The position numbers were made by a program, and so were the translations under genes. This document shows positions 40,942-49,900 of a stretch of 64,000 bases of DNA, one piece after another. The notes under the pieces were generated by a model. The model saw only the letters and a list, made by a program, of their open reading frames with translations, was not told the DNA's origin and made no database searches. Source of the DNA: Anaeramoeba ignava BMAN. Lineage: Eukaryota > Protista > Anaeramoebae. How positions within the stretch are numbered: position 1 is the first letter of the stretch; every line of letters begins with the position of its first letter. The DNA lies in contig JAPDFW010000059.1 in the NCBI GenBank assembly GCA_028826165.1, positions 434,001 through 498,000 on the forward strand, written 5' to 3'.

Positions 40942-43900
40942 TTAATTAAATTTTTTTGATTTTGATTTTAATTGATTCAAAGGATTCATAATATCAAAAG
41001 CACCTGAACCATTAGCACCAACACGACCAACAACAATTCTAGAAGAAGGTGTTCTAAGATCATCATAATCACCATGAAGAACCGATTCAAGAAGGAATTT
41101 AAAAGTAGTTTCGAAGCTCATTTTCTGGAATGGGGAAACTGAGGAATTCATTGTGATTCTATTAAGAGCACGGAAAGTGCCTTCATATGTCATATAATCA
41201 GCAATTAGGGACAAATGACGTGTATCAACGCTTACACTATAAACTTTGAATACTTTTTGGATTTCGAGAATAATTGATTCCCGAGCTGCCTCAACACCGT
41301 ATGTATCTAGAATCGCAGCGATATCGTTACACTCAAGATCTTCAATATCAATCATTGTACTGTAACTGTGTGCTGCGGTTAGATTCACCCCTTCTGTTTG
41401 AAGATAGAACTTGTCTTTTCCTTTGTTCTCCTTTTTTAATACATAACATCTTTGTATCCCTTTTACATTGTGAACTTCTGTTTTTTTACTCGCTTCTTCT
41501 ATCAAACTTGATATCAAAAATTTCGGTGTGTTTAATGGAACGTGAATTGCAAATTGGCATGTTTTGAGTTCTTGATCAACAAGGTTTTGTTTGATTTCGA
41601 TTGGAGTTGATTCTTTTGTATTTTGGGATTTTTCTCTTGTTTTCGTCTTTGTAAGTGTTTTATCAATATTTTCTATTTGATTTTCGTCATTTTCATCATT
41701 TTCATCATTTTCAATTTGATTTTCATTATTTTCAATATTTTCATTTTGATTTTCATTATTTTCATTATTTTCATTATTTTCATTTTCAATCCTAATTGTC
41801 TGATTTCCAGCAACATCTGTTGTATTTTGCTTCTTGTTTTTCTTTGTTAAGCTTTGTTCATCATCTGCTTCATCATAAGTTGCCTTTTCAGTTTTTTTGT
41901 CTTTACGTTGAGCCTCTGTCATATCATCTTCATTATCCAGATTAGAATTTTTATTCTGATCAGTTTCACCGAATTCAGCATCACCTTTTGAGACTGTTTT
42001 GTTAACAATAATATTACTTGAATGATATTTTGAGATTTCCTTATTGATAATCTTATTTAGCAAAGGCAGGAAGAATATGTTTATAATTGAATTAAGAGAT
42101 TCTTGAGTTTTCCCAATTTTTCGGAGACGTTTTGAGCGCAGATTAAGTTTGATATGATATACTCTCTCAGGATTTCCACTAAGAAGCTGCAAAGATTCCG
42201 AGACTTGAATTGACGAGATGACTCCTGAAAGAGAGATATTTGATAGCAAAAGTGCGAGTTGTGTAGCGTCGTCGCGAGTGAGATGATCTTTGAGAGGAAG
42301 TATCATTGTTGGTGTTGATATTTTCTTGCTTGCTGTCATGATAACTTCTCGCAAACGAGGAATTCCCAGTGTTAAATTTGTTGCTCCAAATCCAGCAAGA
42401 TGAAAAGTGTCGTAGAGATTGATTCCGTGAAGATTCGCAAATGTTCTGTTGTCTGAAACGGTAAGATCGTAAACATGTTTGTGTGTTGGCTCAACTTCTT
42501 CAATATTTACAATATCATCGAAATGTATATCATTGTGAATCAAACGCTTTAGAATTTTGTGTTCCTTTGTGCTCATCATGTTTTGATTTAATTTTAGCTC
42601 TTTTTTGAGCAAGAATCGTGAATGAGAACCTTTGAAATGTTTTGTATTTATTCCTGGAATCATATCCTGATCAAGATTTTGTTTCTGCTCGTTTTCTCGA
42701 ATTTTTTCCATTTCAAATGATTTGGATTGCAAAATTGTACCAATTTTAAATGCAAATTTTTGCGCCCAATGATTTGAAAGTTGTAATTGGTGTTGGTCTC
42801 CAATTTCTGCAACAATACCAAATCTATTTAGAAGATGAATCATTAAAGAGAAAGTCTTTTCATCACGGAAGTGTGTTTTGATGGAAACGGAATCTTTTTT
42901 TTGAGTAATTATCGATGTTGTGTTGATTGATGCATCAAGAAATCCTTTTAAAAATGAGGATTTTGATAGTAAAAACCAATTTGGAAGTGTTGGCTTGTTC
43001 AAATCCATGAAACAAAATTGCAAGAAAAGAATCAGAAACGAAGATTCAATTTGGATTTGGTTAGATCGGATATTGTTTGATGTATTATAATTGAAATTTG
43101 AAATATTTTGGATTAAATTGCCTTTCAAAAAGGAAAGATTGGTTGTTTTTGTATCAATTGAAGATAAAAGTCTTTTTCTAAATTCATCAAGAATGCTGTG
43201 GAAACTGGATGTGAAAAGATGGACAATGTGGTTTATTTGAGGAAAGTCTTTCTTGTCGATATTGATTGATATCAAGGAATGGGGATAATTTTTTGAAGAA
43301 GAACCATTGATGAAAAAAATGCCGAGAAAAAACCCGAGTTCGAAATTAAGAGGAATATTAAGTGGGATTGAAGGATCAAGATGAGGATGAGAAGATAAAG
43401 AAGAGGTATTGAAAATATTGTAGAAAAGTGATTTTTGGGAGATGTATTGAGAAAAAGACAGGGAGGAAATTTGGGCATTTTCTGGGATAGATATTCTTTT
43501 TGTAATTGGGATGTAATCTCCGAGAGAAAGAGAAGCGCCTGAAACAGGTACAATTTTGTTGTTTATTTGGCGAAGAAAAGATTTTGCTTTTGTGGCAATT
43601 ACAGAACGACCTGATCTTGTTGTAATTTTCAAGAGAGTTGATGAACCATCTTTGTTTATTGGCAGATGGCGAGTTACAGCCTCTAATGTTTTCCACTCAA
43701 TTTTACCTTTTTTACTAACTGATAAAACTGAATAATTGGATGATTTATCAATGTTGATCAAGGTTGTATCGTTTGGAAAGCGTTCGATAGATGGAGAATT
43801 TGGAGCTGTTTTGGAAATTAAAGAATCAATAAACTCGCCCATTTTTGTTGTTGTTATGAGGTTTGTTTGCTCGTTTTTGAGGATAATTTCTTCTTGCCAG

Positions 43901-46900
43901 TCCACTGAGTTTAGCGTGTTGTGAACGATGATTCCTGATGATGTTGTGAAGCTTTGAGAGGTTTTAACTGAGAAGTCATAAACATATTTGGTTTTGGGGA
44001 TGATTGGTGTGATTTCAACAATTTCATCCCATATGATTTTGCTGTTTATTGCGTTTTCGAGTGTTTTCATTTGTGAGGAGAGTTTTAGTTTGATATTTGG
44101 ATCATTTGCGATGATTTTTTGTATTAAATTGAAGTGTTTTTGGAGAAGACTTCTTGGTATTGTTTTTTTCGGAAGAGATTTGGGTTGTGGAAGAGAAGGG
44201 AAAGAATCTGATAGATGAGCATATATTTCGTGAACAAGTCCATCTATACCTGGGATTAAGTCTTGGAAAGTATTTTGGGGTTGCTGTTTGAATTGGGCAA
44301 TGCTTGGTATTTTGAGAGTATATGTTTTTTTGGATTTGGAATAATGGAATGTGGAGAATATTTGGAGTCTACTGAGAAGAAGAGCTATTGAGTAAGTTGT
44401 TGTTCTTTCAAGAATAGTGTATTTTTTGTGATTGATGCTGTTACTTCGAAGTTGTTGATAAATGGTTTGTTTTTTGGAATTGGGATTTTTTTGGGAAAGA
44501 ATCAAGAACATTGACAAAAATGATTCAATAAAAGGATCATGAGCAGAATATAGAAAATGAGGGAAAGATTGCTGTGATTGAGGGAAAAGATGATGGAAAA
44601 GAAGACAATATTCAGATTGGATATGAAGTGTTAATTTGAAAGTGGATAAAGAGGTATCTATTGAATGAGAATAAACTGAAAAAGCAGAAGAGCGAGCAAA
44701 AGAAAGAAATTCAGAAAGAAGAAGATTTGCAATATCAAGAGAAGGGATATTAGAGAAGGATATGGAAGAAGGATGAGTATCAAGATTATCGACAGATCCA
44801 GAAAAGAGATAAGCCGCACAAACAGAAGCGAAGAAAGATGAAAGATGAATTTTCGAAGGAAGAGGATGATTTAAATAGAGAAACTTTTCAGAACAAGAAT
44901 TTGAAAGAGGAAGATTGTTTGCAACAGGGAGAAAGTGTCCTGTGCGGAGATCTGAGCCGCGAATAGGAATAATATTATTGTTTGAGCGAGTGAGGAAGGA
45001 ATGAGAAGGTGTTGCACATACATGACGACCTGATTTTGTTATGATATTGATAAGAATACCGTTGGGAGGATGCCGAGAGATCTGAGAAACAGGGAGCCAA
45101 TCAACAGATTCGTTGCGGCATATTCCAGGCACAAGAAGATTAAGAGATGATGGGATGTCTAAAACAAGGGAATCAGAAGAGTTGTGAATTTTTCTCGCAA
45201 ATTTTGAGAATTGAGAAAGAAGAGAATCAATGAAATTTCCAATTGGAAGAGTGGATATTGATTTACCAAAACGTAGAATAACACCCTCATCATAAGCAAG
45301 ACTCATCTGTGTTGAGGGTTCGCCTATGGATTGTGCAGCAATGATTCCAACAGTTTCTCCTGGTTGAACAAGACTGTAGAAATATTTAAGAAACATAAGC
45401 GAACGGAATTGTGCAGCGGTTGGTTTGTCAGTTTGGTCTGGAGCTTGATTTGTGCTATATGATATTTTTTGTGGAGATGAGAGAAGATTATCAGGGTTGG
45501 ATTCAATGTATTTCTGGATTTGGTAACTGAGCTTATCGGAAATGGCTCCTAGATTGCGCGAAGGATCAAGAATAGAAATCACAGGATCTATAAAGGGAAG
45601 AAGTTTGGCAAGGCCTGTGTATGATGAGAATATATCTTGAGGGAGAAGATGAGCGAAATCTGGATGTGATTTTGCAAATTTTTCAAGAAGGGTTTTGGGG
45701 TTTTTGAATTGGGTTGTTTGTTTGACTGCGGATTTTTGTATAAGAGATATTTTTTGGTTCATATCAAAAACAGAGTCTTCATTTTGTTCGAGAATTTTGT
45801 CGACTATTGAGCGATTATCTATTTTTTCTGAGATTTCGTTTGTATGTTTTAAATTTTCATCTGAATTTTCATTTAAATTTTCATCTGAATTTTCATTTAA
45901 ATTTTCATCTGAATTTTCGTCTGTTTTTTCCAAATTTTTTGCAATTTTCGACAAACGAGAAATGGTTTGAGAAATCAAAGCAGAATTGTATTGTGTTGCT
46001 TGACGATCATAAGAAAGAGCTTCTCTTGTAGAAAGAATACGGGCAACAACCTTAGGTTGGTATTTATCAATAAGAGCACGACAATTACGGAGAACGAAAA
46101 TAAATTGGTCAAGAAATTTTGATTTCGAGACATCGATGCCATCCTCGCCATAGAGGAATTGGATAATACTTCCATCGGAATCTCTGACTGTTGAATCGTA
46201 GTGAACACGAAGACCTTCGAGATGCTTAATAAGACATCGTTGGAGATAACCACTTCGACTTGTCTTGACTGCTGTATCAACAAGACCTTCACGGCCTGCC
46301 ATTGAATGGAAGAAATATTCTGGCGGAGATATTCCTGTCAGAAAACGATTGCGCACAAATCCTCCTGCTCGTGCTGTTAAATCAAAAGGCGCAAAACAAG
46401 GCAGGCTTTTTCCACTCGTCATAAGAGGTACTCTTCTTCCCTCTAATTCTTGTTGGCCAAGTAGGCATGATATTTGAGAGAAGTTTACTACGCTTCCCTT
46501 GGCTCCGGAACTAGTCATTAATGATAGGAAATTTTGTGGGAATCTTTTCACTTGTCCGACTGGAATTGATTCTTCAATTATTTTAGTTGTGATTTTACTG
46601 AGTGCGCTTTTCATGAGGGAATCTAGTTTGCCGCCTGATTGTTCAGGATCTGCGGCTATTTTATGGCGTAATTTACTTCTAATTTGAGCGCGATGAATAG
46701 ATTTGAGGAGATTATTTTCATCTTCATCTTCATTTTCGTTTTCCAATAAATTTTCATCATTTTCATTTTCATTTTCATCTTGATTTTTATTTTTTGGATT
46801 TGGATTTGATTCTGAACGAAGTGGAGCTTCATCAACAAATTCTTGTGTCACTCTTTCTGCTTCATCATCTGCAGAAACAAAAAGTTCGCGACGAATTTTC

Positions 46901-49900
46901 TCAGCATTTTTGTTCATGAGCATATCATCCATCCCACAAGTAAAACCATGGATCTGAAGATAGTAAGTGAAAAGTCTGCCAAGAGCAGAGAGCAAAGTAT
47001 CGGCAAAGGAAGGACCATATAATTCAAAGACGGAATGAACAAGACCGAAGTTAGAAGCACCGAATTGAGCACGATCAAGAACGCCAGTAAGAAGCTCGTT
47101 CTCGACAACGATGACTGTACCCTCTTCTTTAGCAGCAGAACCTCCCCAAACAGAGACGGGAACTTTAGTATTTGAGACGATTGAGATGGGGTGTTTTCCA
47201 CAAGTGAGATGAGCAAGAAGAAACGAGATGATCTGCTTTCCAGTCCACAAAGGTTTGGGTTTAATGATAGCAGGAATTCCAAGATGGAACCTGGTTTGCT
47301 CTACACTTCGCGGATCGTTGATATCCTCGTTTGAATATGGGGAGAAGAAACTTTGTCGGACACCACGTATCTCGCTCCCATCACCGAAGGCAGAATAAAG
47401 AAGTTGCATAGCTTGTGGACGTGTAAAAAATGTATTCTTTTGAGTAAGAAGAATTCCAGTGACAATATTGTCTTGAATAAGTCCACGCAGAGGACGGCCA
47501 TCGGTACCAGATGTGTATTGCCGTTCTGCGCCAGCGATTTCATACGCCTCAGCGCGGGAGATATGATCCTGAGGGAAGTGGAGATTCATCTCATCACCGT
47601 CAAAATCAGCGTTATAAGAATTACAGTTTGCGTAGTGAAGTCTGATAGTATTCTGTCCATATAGAATTTTAGCGCGATGAGCCATTATACTGGGTTTATG
47701 TAAAGTTGGCTGTCGATTCACAAGCAAAACATCGCCAGCCAGAAGATGTCTTCCGACCTTTTTGGAAGCGAGAAGATCCGCAAAGGGATCTGGGGTTGTG
47801 TTGTTTGCAGGGTTTGAATGAGCGGGGGTGCGTCGCGGTTGTGTGAGTAATTTTTTGCTGAGCGCAACGCGTTGTGGTCTTGTCAGATATTGGAGATTGA
47901 AAATGCTTCCTCGCTCGTCAAGAAGATAGTTGGCACCGGGATAGCGATCGGGTCCGTTGACAACTGCTTGTCGCAAACGTTTGACGTTATGTTGGGTCAC
48001 TGGTTCTGGAAATGACAGTTTTTTTGCGAACCGCAACGGAACACCAATTTCGTTGGTGCGAATTAACGGATCCGGTGAAATAACAGATCTTGCTGCATAA
48101 TTAACACGCTTCCCCATCATGTTGCGACGGAAAAGACCCTCCTTCTTCTCCATCACCTGTCGTATTCCTGGAGTCGGGTGAAAGTCCCGTGAAAATGCTG
48201 CGTCGTATAGGCAGTTCACATTGTATTGAAGCATGTTCCACGCGCCGATAACCCCTCCAAACCGCCGATCAACGACTGTTGTCTCATCATCCTTCTTCTC
48301 TTGATCTTGCTCGCTCTTTTTCGGTGTCTCCATCTGTTTCGACAGCACCATGATCCGCATATTCCATTCCATCACTTTCGCAAAAAATCGTGTTTGCACA
48401 TGATCCGCAAATGTTTCTCCAAGAAAATTCGGCGGACGAAACCGAGGTGGAGTGACAGGCAATACATTCAAGAAGAACATCTCTGCAGTACTTTCTCTTT
48501 GCACACGGAAGTTATCTTGTGTCTTCTGGGAATCGATGTTTTGGGAGTTTTGGCTGAGTGATCCGAAAAGTATATCCATTGAAGTTTTTTCATTTTCCCA
48601 CAGAAGTTTTATGTGTCGCTCCACTTCTATTGTGGATAAGAATTTTGCTTTGCTCCACGGTTTTATCCCTGCTTTTTCTGTCTCACTTCCGTCTTGGTCT
48701 TGCTCCTTTCTCTTCTTTCCGCGTGCTGTGCCGAGAACGTTTCTCATTGCTCTATTGTGTTCTTTTAATTCTTTCCGTTGCCGGGGTGTCAACGGTTTCA
48801 AGAAAATTTTTGTCTGTTTATCTGCCCTGTAGTCAAATGCAACGCCTCCGCAGTTTTCGCAGCGTCTTAGTTTTCCAATTTCATCCAATAATTTTTTGAT
48901 TATTTCTCTCCTGTTCTTCTCTCCATACACAGTCTTCTCGCGCTCCCAACTGCTCTTCATTTCGCTTTGTTGTGCTTCTTTATTCTTCTTCGCGTTTCTT
49001 TCCTCTCTCTCGCTTGTCTGTTTCTTTATCACTCCCGCTTTTTCCAGTATGTTTTCTATCATCCTCTCCACAGTTTCTTCTGTTGTCTCTTTGTTTTTCT
49101 CGCTGGTTTTTTTGCTTTTTTTATTTCCCTTTTGCGTGCTTTCATCTTCCACAAGGAATTCCTTGATGTCGCTTTTTTTTGCTTGTTTTTTTTCGTTATC
49201 CGAGTCAAACAGTGCGTCTGAATCGAATTCGTCTTCATTTTCTTCCATTTCAATTTCTTGGTTCTTTTTTTTGCCCAATTTCTGTTGTTTTCGTTTTTTG
49301 GAGAGTTCTTGTCTTTCTTGTGCTTTTTGATGTTTGTGCATGTTGTAGGAGAGCTTATCCAGCATCTCCATTTCAGAGAAATATCCTTTGTCAAGAAGCA
49401 GTAATTTTGCCATTATTATTTTCAGTCTAATTGGTGATATTTTCATTCTATGGCAGAATAGGCATGTGCATTTCATTAATTTGAATAACATTTTAAATGC
49501 AAATGGGTTATATATTGGTACACATAATCGAATATGTCCGAAGTGACCTGGACATTGTGTGTGACTTTTTATTTCAATTTTTATATAAATTATTATATAA
49601 ATTATTATATAAATTATTATATAAATTATTATATAAATTATTATATTAATTATTATATAAATTATTATATTAATTATTATATAAATTATTATATTAATTA
49701 TTATATTAATTATTATATAAATTATTATATTAATTATTATATAAATTATTATATAAATTATTATATAAATTATTATATAAATTATTATATAAATTATTAT
49801 TTAAATTATTATATAAATTATTATATAAATTATTATTTAAATTATTATATAAATTATTATATAAATTATTATATAAATTATTATATAAATTATTTAATAA

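What the first reader, a model, noticed from the sequence alone, without database searches (positions are those of the whole stretch)
42409..43908. Intein 2 lacks three canonical catalytic residues (TxxH to TKAK, penultimate His to Tyr, terminal Asn to Asp)
Seen: Ser1; block B is ATKAKSF rather than TxxH; block F Asp is retained (VYDLTV); the C-terminus is NLYD|T. Established: class 1 splicing uses the block-B His for the N-O/S shift and terminal Asn cyclisation; Asp- and Gln-terminated inteins are rare exceptions. Inference: because RPA1 is essential and the 8.6-kb exon is intact, this intein probably splices by variant chemistry (Lys as general acid, Asp anhydride formation) or with help from the adjacent canonical intein.
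Basis: partly seen in the sequence, partly recalled or inferred. Interest (0 to 1): 0.85.

Follow-up and report, generated by a model that had tools for sequence, protein, structure and literature searches.

The report
Histidine-free, Asp-ended intein family member
The odd second intein in this amoeba's RNA polymerase I gene is not decayed: it belongs to a large, conserved family, mostly in giant-virus RNA polymerases, that has swapped all the usual catalytic histidines for lysine or arginine and the final asparagine for aspartate, so it very probably still splices by a variant chemistry.

Summary
Intein 2 (42409-43908, minus strand, 500 codons) splits the RPA1 trigger loop at TLN^TFH. It has Ser1, block B ATKAKSF, block F VYDLTVSDNRTF, and ends LYD|T. 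The GAC and TKAK codons are unchanged in contigs of three runs from two studies.

A fourth histidine is also missing: the block-F His is Arg.

These residues are the norm for the intein's family. Among 150 representatives at this site (clusters at 50% identity or less):
- Ser1 in 139/139
- Lys at the block-B His position in 133/147
- block-F Asp in 145/145
- Arg/Lys at the block-F His position in 130/145
- terminal Asp in 139/139

A sister family in the bridge helix (TAVK^T) shares Lys plus Asp. The neighbouring TQM^TLN family (intein 1 type) is canonical (TxxH, HN).

About half of the TLN^TFH inteins have no neighbouring intein, and this genome's own RPB1 carries one alone. No helper is therefore needed.

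In intein 2 the endonuclease has lost both catalytic acids while the splicing residues are intact.

Best reading: an autonomous, active intein with histidine-free chemistry.

The atypical C-terminal residue was apparently noted in the 2023 Anaeramoeba intein paper, in a supplement I could not read. I found no report of the family-wide Lys-for-His replacement. The scan had already flagged this stretch once, as twin inteins (s1-707777).

The parts
40942..49491 (-). [quoted passage not shown]
   Evidence: It is the only RPA1-type locus in the assembly; the other two Rpb1-type loci are RPB1 (C67) and a third on C76.
43918..45303 (-). Intein 1, 462 aa, at site GEPSTQM^TLN. It is canonical: Ser1, block B ATPSHSF, ends VHN|T.
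   Evidence: Its allelic family is canonical: block-B His in about 121/126 and HN ending in 117/117.
43909..43917 (-). Three-codon extein Thr-Leu-Asn between the two inteins. It corresponds to trigger-loop residues T1080-N1082 of yeast Rpb1.
   Evidence: The alignment of the paralogous RPB1 ends at yeast N1082. The nucleotide-interacting region 1077-1085 is described in PMC5127505.
42409..43908 (-). Intein 2, 500 aa, at site TLN^TFH; the subject of the finding
43906..43908 (-). Ser1 (TCA), the N-terminal nucleophile
   Evidence: Invariant in the family: 252/252 and 139/139. Both serine codon families are used across viral loci.
43582..43593 (-). Block B Thr106-Lys107-Ala108-Lys109, in place of TxxH. 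Lys109 occupies the His position.
   Evidence: No variant in the reads-derived contigs.
43297..43338 (-). First LAGLIDADG motif, degenerate. The family has GAYLAEG; here it is GIFFING, so the catalytic Glu is lost.
42916..42954 (-). Second LAGLIDADG motif, degenerate. The family has GYFSGDG; here it is DASINTT, so the catalytic Asp is lost.
42439..42474 (-). Block F VYDLTVSDNRTF. Asp481 is retained. Arg488 sits where the usual block-F His lies.
42409..42414 (-). Tyr499-Asp500 (TAC GAC), in place of His-Asn
42406..42408 (-). Thr+1 (ACT), the C-extein nucleophile and first residue of TFH

Best explanation
Intein 2 is a functional, self-sufficient member of a conserved clade of inteins. The clade lives in the active-centre elements of RNA-polymerase largest subunits, mainly in giant viruses (Nucleocytoviricota). 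Two copies are in this amoeba's nuclear genes, in RPA1 and RPB1.

The clade uses no catalytic histidine and no cysteine. Its fixed set is Ser1, Thr(B7), Lys at the block-B His position, Asp(F4), Arg/Lys at the block-F His position, a variable penultimate residue (often Arg), a terminal Asp, and Thr/Ser at +1.

Most likely path (inferred, class-1-like):
1. Ser1 makes the N-O acyl shift. The Lys109 ammonium group and Thr106 do what His and Thr normally do at the scissile amide.
2. Thr+1 takes over the N-extein by transesterification, with help from Asp481.
3. Asp500 cyclises to a succinic anhydride and releases the intein. Arg488 polarises the carbonyl or stabilises the oxyanion.
4. An O-N shift seals TLN-TFH.

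Shown: the residues, their conservation, the fold, and independence from a neighbouring intein. Inferred: that splicing occurs here, and the roles of the individual residues.
For: 1. Family-wide conservation at the same site. Among 150 representatives clustered at 50% identity or less: Ser1 139/139, Lys at B10 133/147, Asp at F4 145/145, Arg/Lys at F13 130/145, terminal Asp 139/139, penultimate His only 2. Alignment A1 of 57 members: Ser1, F4 Asp and terminal Asp are invariant; the T, K and K of TKAK are at 90% or more.

2. Selection acts on the amino acid, not only through shared descent. Across 80 giant-virus loci, Lys B10 uses AAG 53 and AAA 27; terminal Asp uses GAT 51 and GAC 24; Ser1 uses both AGY and TCN codons.

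3. Sixty mini-inteins of 184-300 aa with no endonuclease keep the same residues.

4. Inside intein 2 the endonuclease has lost both catalytic acids, which 40-41 of 41 full-length relatives keep. Every splicing residue matches the family.

5. Between-run differences in intein 2 (6 synonymous, 5 non-synonymous) all lie in residues 201-376. None lies in the splicing lobes.

6. The host site is in the nucleotide-interacting region of the trigger loop, in a single-copy essential gene.

7. At least 111 relatives, and this genome's RPB1 intein (GTKAKSF ... MMD|TFH), have no adjacent intein.

8. With block-B and F13 columns removed, the Lys/Asp types form one side of a branch. The AU test does not reject their monophyly (p 0.546).

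9. The model is a confident HINT plus LAGLIDADG fold.

10. Reviews accept Asp cyclisation as a variant of step 3 (PMC4031507 and PMC10663303).
Against: There is no direct evidence of splicing for any member: no junction peptide, no in vitro assay. No RNA run was identified, so expression of this gene is not shown.

The block-B His is described as essential in most inteins. Lys has a much higher pKa, so a simple one-for-one swap as general acid is not self-evident.

In 14 of 147 representatives the B10 residue is Leu, Glu, Arg, His, Asn or Asp while the B8 Lys is kept. The key basic residue may therefore not be B10 alone.

Conservation counts come from related sequences, and part of the set was retrieved with a pattern that contains TKAK.

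The tools return no coordinates for the model, so no active-site geometry could be examined.
Confidence: 0.72

Rival explanations
1. Intein 2 is active, but by a route that differs more deeply from class 1. Three examples. The N-terminal step could be driven mainly by strain or by the -1 Asn rather than by Lys109. The B8 Lys107 rather than B10 could be the catalytic base or acid. The C-terminal break could occur without Asp cyclisation.
For: B10 is replaced by non-basic residues in 14 of 147 representatives, and these keep B8 Lys and the terminal Asp. The bridge-helix sister family has Glu, not Lys, at B8 and a hydrophobic residue at F13, so the auxiliary residues are not uniform. PMC6333167 shows that bulk at -1 can compensate for loss of the His. 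PMC4031507 notes that 'other mechanisms are possible' for Asp-ended inteins.
Against: Ser1, Thr+1, F4 Asp and the terminal Asp are invariant, which is the set that a class-1-like four-step path needs. The -1 residue here is Asn, which is not bulky.
Confidence: 0.2
2. Intein 2 cannot splice alone. It depends on the adjacent canonical intein 1, or on a host factor, for example for folding or for one of its cleavage steps.
For: In this gene the two inteins are only three residues apart. 121 relatives show the same twin arrangement.
Against: At least 111 relatives have TQx-TLN directly before the intein, with no neighbour. The RPB1 of the same genome has a Lys/Asp intein alone at this site. The family occurs in very diverse viral genomes, which argues against a specific host factor.
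Confidence: 0.05
3. Intein 2 is a dead remnant. It stays in the mature Pol I as a large trigger-loop insertion, or the gene is a pseudogene or an assembly error.
For: Four canonical catalytic residues are missing and the homing endonuclease is degenerate. Bacterial RNA polymerases tolerate large trigger-loop insertions (Si3, PMC10895346, listed).
Against: The missing residues are replaced by the family's own conserved set. The ORF is intact over 8.5 kb, and the exteins show only synonymous differences between runs. It is the only RPA1 in the assembly. The codons are confirmed in independent assemblies. The insertion lies between N1082 and T1083 of the nucleotide-interacting region, not at the loop tip.
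Confidence: 0.03

Closest known systems
Trigger-loop (TLN^TFH) inteins of giant-virus RPB1 genes (metagenomic Nucleocytoviricota, GVMAG contigs)
   Same: Same insertion site. Same Ser1 / TKAK / F4 Asp / F13 Arg-Lys / terminal Asp / Thr+1 set. 25-50% identity. Same HINT plus LAGLIDADG layout.
   Different: Most viral copies keep intact LAGLIDADG catalytic acids; the window's copy has lost both. The hosts are viral RPB1-type subunits, whereas here the host is a nuclear RPA1.
Anaeramoeba intein catalogue (Gallot-Lavallee et al. 2023, PMC10710043), 'cluster 9' with atypical C-terminal residues shared with Nucleocytoviricota
   Same: Same organism group. RPA1 is listed as an intein host. An atypical C-terminal residue and a viral link are stated in the main text.
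   Different: The details are in a supplement that is not held here. I could not confirm that this intein is in cluster 9, nor whether the Lys-for-His and Arg-for-His replacements were noticed.
Asp- or Gln-terminated class 1 inteins (Amitai, Dassa and Pietrokovski 2004, as cited in PMC1635734 and PMC4031507)
   Same: A terminal Asp replaces Asn, and splicing is thought to go through Asp cyclisation.
   Different: From my own knowledge, not tested here: those inteins keep the block-B His. Here all catalytic histidines are absent as well.
Thermococcus kodakaraensis CDC21-1 intein orthologues (Tori et al. 2012, via PMC4031507 and PMC6333167)
   Same: They naturally lack the block-B His and use a lysine to activate the N-terminal junction. 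The PhoCDC21-1 structure is among the fold matches.
   Different: There the Lys (Lys58) lies outside the motifs, about 23 residues after B10. Here that position is Tyr132, and the Lys sits at B10 itself. They are a small archaeal group, according to the reviews read; whether they end in Asn I know only from memory and did not test. This is a large viral and eukaryotic clade ending in Asp.
A. flamelloides RPA1 intein (P0275) at the same TLN^TFH site
   Same: Same host protein and same junction in a sister species. Ser1 and Thr+1.
   Different: It is fully canonical: ATQSHSF, block F ...NNDHTF, ending CHN. Its endonuclease motifs are intact. It is only 23% identical to intein 2. It shows that this junction does not force the variant chemistry.
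PI-PkoII, TliVMA and PI-PfuI (solved HINT plus LAGLIDADG inteins)
   Same: Overall fold and domain order.
   Different: In the sequence alignments, PI-PkoII and the TFIIB inteins carry His at the block-B position where intein 2 has Lys. The rest of their catalytic sets was not compared here. Sequence identity to the model is about 15%.

Membership tests
Intein (HINT splicing domain, Pfam PF14890) | In-frame insert in a conserved host motif; its removal restores the motif | tested here: met
   GEPSTQM-TLN-TFHLAG is restored after removing both inserts.
Intein (HINT splicing domain, Pfam PF14890) | Profile match above the curated cut-off, and a HINT fold | tested here: met
   PF14890 scores 45.5 bits against 35.8. 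AF2 pLDDT is 88.1. Foldseek E is 1.8e-22 to the TliVMA intein.
Intein (HINT splicing domain, Pfam PF14890) | Nucleophile at residue 1 and at +1 | tested here: met
   Ser1 and Thr+1
Intein (HINT splicing domain, Pfam PF14890) | Block B Thr-x-x-His | tested here: not met
   Thr is present, but His is replaced by Lys109. The position is confirmed by profile alignment to PI-PkoII and the TFIIB inteins.
Intein (HINT splicing domain, Pfam PF14890) | C-terminal (His-)Asn | tested here: not met
   Tyr-Asp, TAC GAC at 42409-42414
Intein (HINT splicing domain, Pfam PF14890) | Demonstrated protein splicing | not testable with these tools
   No proteomic or in vitro data for this intein. The 2023 paper confirmed splicing only for three other inteins.
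Class 1 inteins ending in Asp | Residue-1 nucleophile, +1 nucleophile, and a terminal Asp able to cyclise | tested here: met
   Ser1, Thr+1 and Asp500. The mechanism class is described in PMC4031507.
Class 2 inteins | No nucleophile at residue 1 (Ala1) | tested here: not met
   Ser1 is invariant in the family.
Class 3 inteins | Cys at block F position 4 (WCT triad) | tested here: not met
   F4 is Asp481, and is Asp in 258/258 relatives.
Tko CDC21-1-type His-less inteins | Compensating Lys about 23 residues after the B10 position | tested here: not met
   That position is Tyr132 (family consensus G-D-Y). The Lys is at B10 itself.
Lys/Asp RNA-polymerase inteins (the clade defined here) | Ser1, Lys at B10, Asp at F4, terminal Asp, Thr/Ser at +1, inserted at TLN^TFH or TAVK^T of an Rpb1-type subunit | tested here: met
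   All features are present. The nearest relative is this genome's RPB1 intein, at 50-51% identity over the splicing lobes.
Anaeramoeba 'cluster 9' (PMC10710043) | The authors' network cluster with atypical C-terminal residues and Nucleocytoviricota members | tested here: inconclusive
   Both properties hold, but the cluster list is in a supplement that is not held.

The most novel reading that the evidence does not exclude
The Lys/Asp inteins are a monophyletic catalytic variant of the intein fold that uses no histidine and no cysteine. The set is Ser1, Lys at B10, Asp at F4, Arg/Lys at F13, and a terminal Asp. The variant has colonised both mobile active-centre elements, bridge helix and trigger loop, of giant-virus RNA polymerases and has jumped into Anaeramoeba RPA1 and RPB1.

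It would be a natural, widespread counter-example to the rule that the block-B histidine is indispensable. In effect it would be a further mechanistic class, and its block-B and block-F substitutions have not been described.
Probability: 0.45. Interest if true: 0.75.

Novelty: new variant of a known kind. Interest (0 to 1): 0.62.

Why it matters
The block-B histidine is called the most conserved intein residue. The reviews I could read list only one small archaeal group and one pseudogene without it.

Here there are hundreds of natural inteins in essential polymerase genes that lack that histidine, the block-F histidine, the penultimate histidine and the terminal asparagine, all together. Each is replaced by a conserved alternative.

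That gives a ready-made natural experiment on what those residues really do. It also gives a set of small (about 185-240 aa) cysteine-free, histidine-free inteins that could behave differently towards oxidation, pH or metal inhibition. That last point is speculation.

It also means that transcription in many giant viruses, and Pol I and Pol II assembly in this amoeba, depend on this chemistry.

Tried and rejected
- **Sequencing or assembly error:** rejected. Contigs of three runs from two studies agree at the key codons.
- **Unexpressed paralogue:** only three Rpb1-type loci exist in the assembly and only one is RPA1. Expression itself could not be checked, because no run is on record as RNA. 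The one reads call was used on contigs.
- **Removal at RNA level:** no joints were seen in any run. The kind of run X4 is unknown, so this is weak evidence.
- **Helper intein:** rejected.
- **Tko CDC21-1-type compensation:** rejected.
- **The invariant His81 (VTRH) as a stand-in for the block-B His:** set aside. The canonical intein 1 family and other canonical inteins of this genome carry the same His.
- **Strict co-variation of B10 Lys with terminal Asp:** not supported as a rule. A few members have His, Leu or Glu at B10 and still end in Asp. With a single origin, co-variation cannot be tested independently anyway.
- **Named cultured virus carrying the family:** the look-up gave only generic names.
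- **Supplement of PMC10710043:** not held.
- **Tree placement of the A. flamelloides intein:** one search used a wrongly cut row, which was my error. It was redone. The position remains unresolved.
- **Organism name:** Anaeramoeba ignava rests on earlier scan notes and on the fit to the 2023 paper. I did not prove it independently.


Full report
**What is there.** The window holds one intact 2849-codon ORF on the minus strand, 40942-49491. Its exteins match Pol I RPA1/RPA190 far better than RPB1 or RPC1: 770 bits against 386 and 358.

Two in-frame inserts interrupt the trigger-loop motif GEPSTQM-TLN-TFHLAG.
- Intein 1 (43918-45303, 462 aa) follows QM.
- Intein 2 (42409-43908, 500 aa) follows TLN.

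Both match Pfam Intein_splicing above its cut-off.

The genome is 42.8 Mb in 147 contigs and holds many related inteins. This fits the published description of Anaeramoeba ignava (PMC10710043), and earlier notes of this scan use that name. I did not prove the name independently.

Read directly from the DNA, intein 2 has:
- Ser1, TCA at 43906-43908
- block B ATKAKSF, with T-K-A-K at 43582-43593
- block F VYDLTVSDNRTF at 42439-42474
- Tyr-Asp, TAC GAC at 42409-42414
- Thr+1, ACT at 42406-42408

A family profile aligned to solved inteins puts Lys109 on the block-B His of PI-PkoII and of the TFIIB mini-inteins.

The residue seven places after the block-F Asp, normally His, is Arg488.

Contigs of three public runs from two studies cover 41800-45800. 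They show no difference at these codons, no indels and no joints.

An AlphaFold2 model built on 57 homologues is confident (pLDDT 88.1, pTM 0.89). It matches HINT plus LAGLIDADG inteins: TliVMA at 1.8e-22, then PI-PkoII and PI-PfuI.

**It is the family norm, not decay.** I searched with the intein region of the precursor and with the intein alone against 1.84 billion representatives. The second search gave 863 hits at E of 1e-3 or less and 155 at 1e-30. Almost all returned proteins are RPB1-type subunits from metagenomes.

I built HMMs of the N- and C-terminal splicing lobes and read off the key columns in 263 proteins.

At the same TLN^TFH site (263 inteins):
- Ser1 252/252
- Lys at B10 245/260, with TKAK in 194
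- F4 Asp 258/258
- F13 Arg/Lys 243/258
- terminal Asp 252/252
- +1 Thr 226, Ser 19

Restricted to the 150 representatives clustered at 50% identity or less, the figures are 139/139, 133/147, 145/145, 130/145 and 139/139. Only two have a penultimate His.

Sixty members are mini-inteins shorter than 300 aa with no endonuclease, and they keep the same set.

A pattern scan of IMG/VR found 229 loci. Many are on GVMAG contigs (giant-virus metagenome assemblies, by their names) of up to 434 kb. Across the 80 loci kept:
- Lys B10 is coded AAG 53 and AAA 27
- terminal Asp is coded GAT 51 and GAC 24
- Ser1 uses both AGY and TCN codons

The amino acids are therefore maintained through synonymous turnover. 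One caveat: the scan pattern itself contained TKAK. The Asp and Ser were not part of it.

**Two sister families sharpen the picture.**
- Many of the same viral proteins carry a further intein in the bridge helix (TAVK^T, 138 cases). These also have Ser1, Lys at B10 (117/138) and a terminal Asp (138/138).
- The inteins at TQM^TLN, the intein 1 type, are canonical. About 121/126 have the block-B His and 117/117 end in His-Asn.

I built a tree of the splicing lobes with the block-B columns removed. The Lys/Asp inteins of both sites fall on one side of a single branch from the canonical ones.

**The sister species.** RPA1 of A. flamelloides (P0275) carries an intein at the very same TLN^TFH junction, and it is fully canonical: ATQSHSF...NNDHTF...CHN. 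Its endonuclease motifs are intact. It is only 23% identical to intein 2. One metagenomic relative of it was found (P0389).

Its place in the tree is unresolved. The free search puts it next to the bridge-helix clade. A tree that keeps all Lys/Asp inteins together is slightly better and is not rejected (p-AU 0.546).

Two conclusions follow. The extein junction does not impose the variant chemistry. And the 'shared RPA1 site' of the two Anaeramoeba species hides two different inteins.

**No helper is needed.** Of the TLN^TFH inteins, 121 sit three residues after a canonical intein, as here. At least 111 follow TQx-TLN directly.

Within this genome, contig C67 encodes RPB1 (379 bits against 162 for RPC1). 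The alignment stops at yeast N1082, exactly at the insertion point. That gene carries a Lys/Asp intein (GTKAKSF ... MMD|TFH) and has no upstream intein. It is the closest relative of intein 2, at 50-51% identity over the splicing lobes. This fits the inter-paralogue transfers reported for Anaeramoeba.

**Signs of selection inside intein 2.** Full-length relatives keep the LAGLIDADG catalytic acids: GAYLAEG in 40 of 41 and GYFSGDG in 41 of 41. Intein 2 has GIFFING and DASINTT, so its homing endonuclease is dead. Its splicing residues nevertheless all match the family.

The differences between runs point the same way:
- exteins: 4 synonymous, 0 non-synonymous
- intein 2: 6 synonymous, 5 non-synonymous, all in residues 201-376 and none in the splicing lobes
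- intein 1: 1 synonymous, 3 non-synonymous, in residues 334-393

The numbers are small.

**How it most likely works.** The site lies between N1082 and T1083 (yeast numbering) of the nucleotide-interacting region of the trigger loop, where substitutions are poorly tolerated (PMC5127505). The gene is the only RPA1 in the assembly. Excision is therefore required.

The invariant set is Ser1, Thr+1, F4 Asp and terminal Asp. That is what a class-1-like four-step path needs: N-O shift, transesterification, cyclisation of the last residue (here Asp to an anhydride), then O-N shift. Reviews accept Asp cyclisation as a variant of step 3.

I infer that Lys109 takes the place of the block-B His at the N-terminal scissile amide. 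I also infer that Arg488, often together with an Arg at the penultimate position in relatives, takes the place of the two C-terminal histidines.

These roles are inference. Two observations warn against over-reading them. Fourteen of 147 representatives have a non-Lys residue at B10 but keep Lys at B8. The bridge-helix family has Glu at B8 and a hydrophobic residue at F13.

**What is known already.** PMC10710043 catalogues the Anaeramoeba inteins and names RPA1 as a host. It states that 'cluster 9' inteins have atypical C-terminal residues that are also found in Nucleocytoviricota. The details are in a supplement that is not held here.

RPB1 (polr2a) inteins in a cultured giant virus are mentioned for Bodo saltans virus (PMC5871332).

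Reviews of 2014, 2018 and 2023 describe the block-B His as the most conserved intein residue. The first two name only the Tko CDC21-1 orthologues and one pseudogene as lacking it. In CDC21-1 the rescuing Lys lies about 23 residues downstream. In intein 2 that position is Tyr132, and the Lys is at the His position itself.

Full-text searches for a lysine or histidine-free block B in viral or RNA-polymerase inteins found nothing.

**Verdict.**
The 'helper intein' half is not.
- This intein is an ordinary, catalogued member of its family.
- The family is the interesting thing: a large natural clade of histidine-free, cysteine-free, Asp-terminated inteins in polymerase active-centre elements.
- Splicing itself remains untested.

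The scan had flagged this same stretch once before, as twin inteins (s1-707777).

Noticed in passing
window 42409-45303; proteins P0011, P0012, P0016, P0019, P0020 and others: The twin arrangement is common in giant-virus RPB1-type proteins: a canonical intein after TQM, then three extein residues TLN, then a Lys/Asp intein. It occurs in 121 of about 240 cases. It is therefore inherited or repeatedly assembled, and is not peculiar to this amoeba.
   Followed up: partly
proteins P0002-P0022 and many others (site TAVK^T[AS]E of the bridge helix): A third allelic intein family sits in the bridge helix of the same viral polymerases. It has 138 representatives, with Lys at the block-B His position in 117 and a terminal Asp in all 138. 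Many viral RPB1 precursors carry three inteins.
   Followed up: partly
P0275:1406-1832 (A. flamelloides RPA1): The sister species has a fully canonical intein (TQSH, block-F His, His-Asn, intact LAGLIDADG acids) at the identical TLN^TFH junction. It is only 23% identical to intein 2. The 'shared RPA1 site' of the 2023 paper is thus occupied by different inteins.
   Followed up: partly
L002 (G000:C67:258176-261691), minus strand: This genome's RPB1 carries a 520-aa Lys/Asp intein at the same site (GTKAKSF ... MMD|TFH). Block F has Leu where intein 2 has Arg. It has no upstream intein. It is the nearest relative of intein 2, which suggests transfer between the Pol I and Pol II genes.
   Followed up: partly
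L006 (G000:C76:195891-199301), plus strand: The third Rpb1-type gene is probably RPC1, judging by its TFHFAGVASM motif (not tested). It has only a canonical intein at the TQM site (TFSH ... THN|TLK). The three polymerases of one cell therefore carry three different intein combinations at the trigger loop.
   Followed up: no
window 42916-42954 and 43297-43338: Both LAGLIDADG catalytic acids of intein 2 are lost. All between-run differences in the intein fall in this central domain (residues 201-376).
   Followed up: yes
window 43918-45303 (intein 1): Intein 1 has Gln where the block-F His usually lies, as do most of its allelic relatives (Gln, Asp or Glu). It keeps the block-B His and His-Asn. 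The block-F His is thus dispensable across the whole wider clade.
   Followed up: partly
proteins P0089, P0124, P0143, P0155, P0164, P0168, P0186, P0252, P0256, P0259: A minority of TLN^TFH inteins have Leu, Glu, His, Asn or Asp at the B10 position. Most keep Lys at B8 (two have Arg there), and those whose C-terminus could be read end in Asp. Either B8 Lys can substitute or these copies are inactive.
   Followed up: no
window about 45900-46150 and 41300-41500 (RPA1 exteins): There are long acidic low-complexity repeats (NENSDENL-type and NENNEN-type runs) inside the RPA1 exteins. They are absent from the solved Pol I structures that the exteins match.
   Followed up: no
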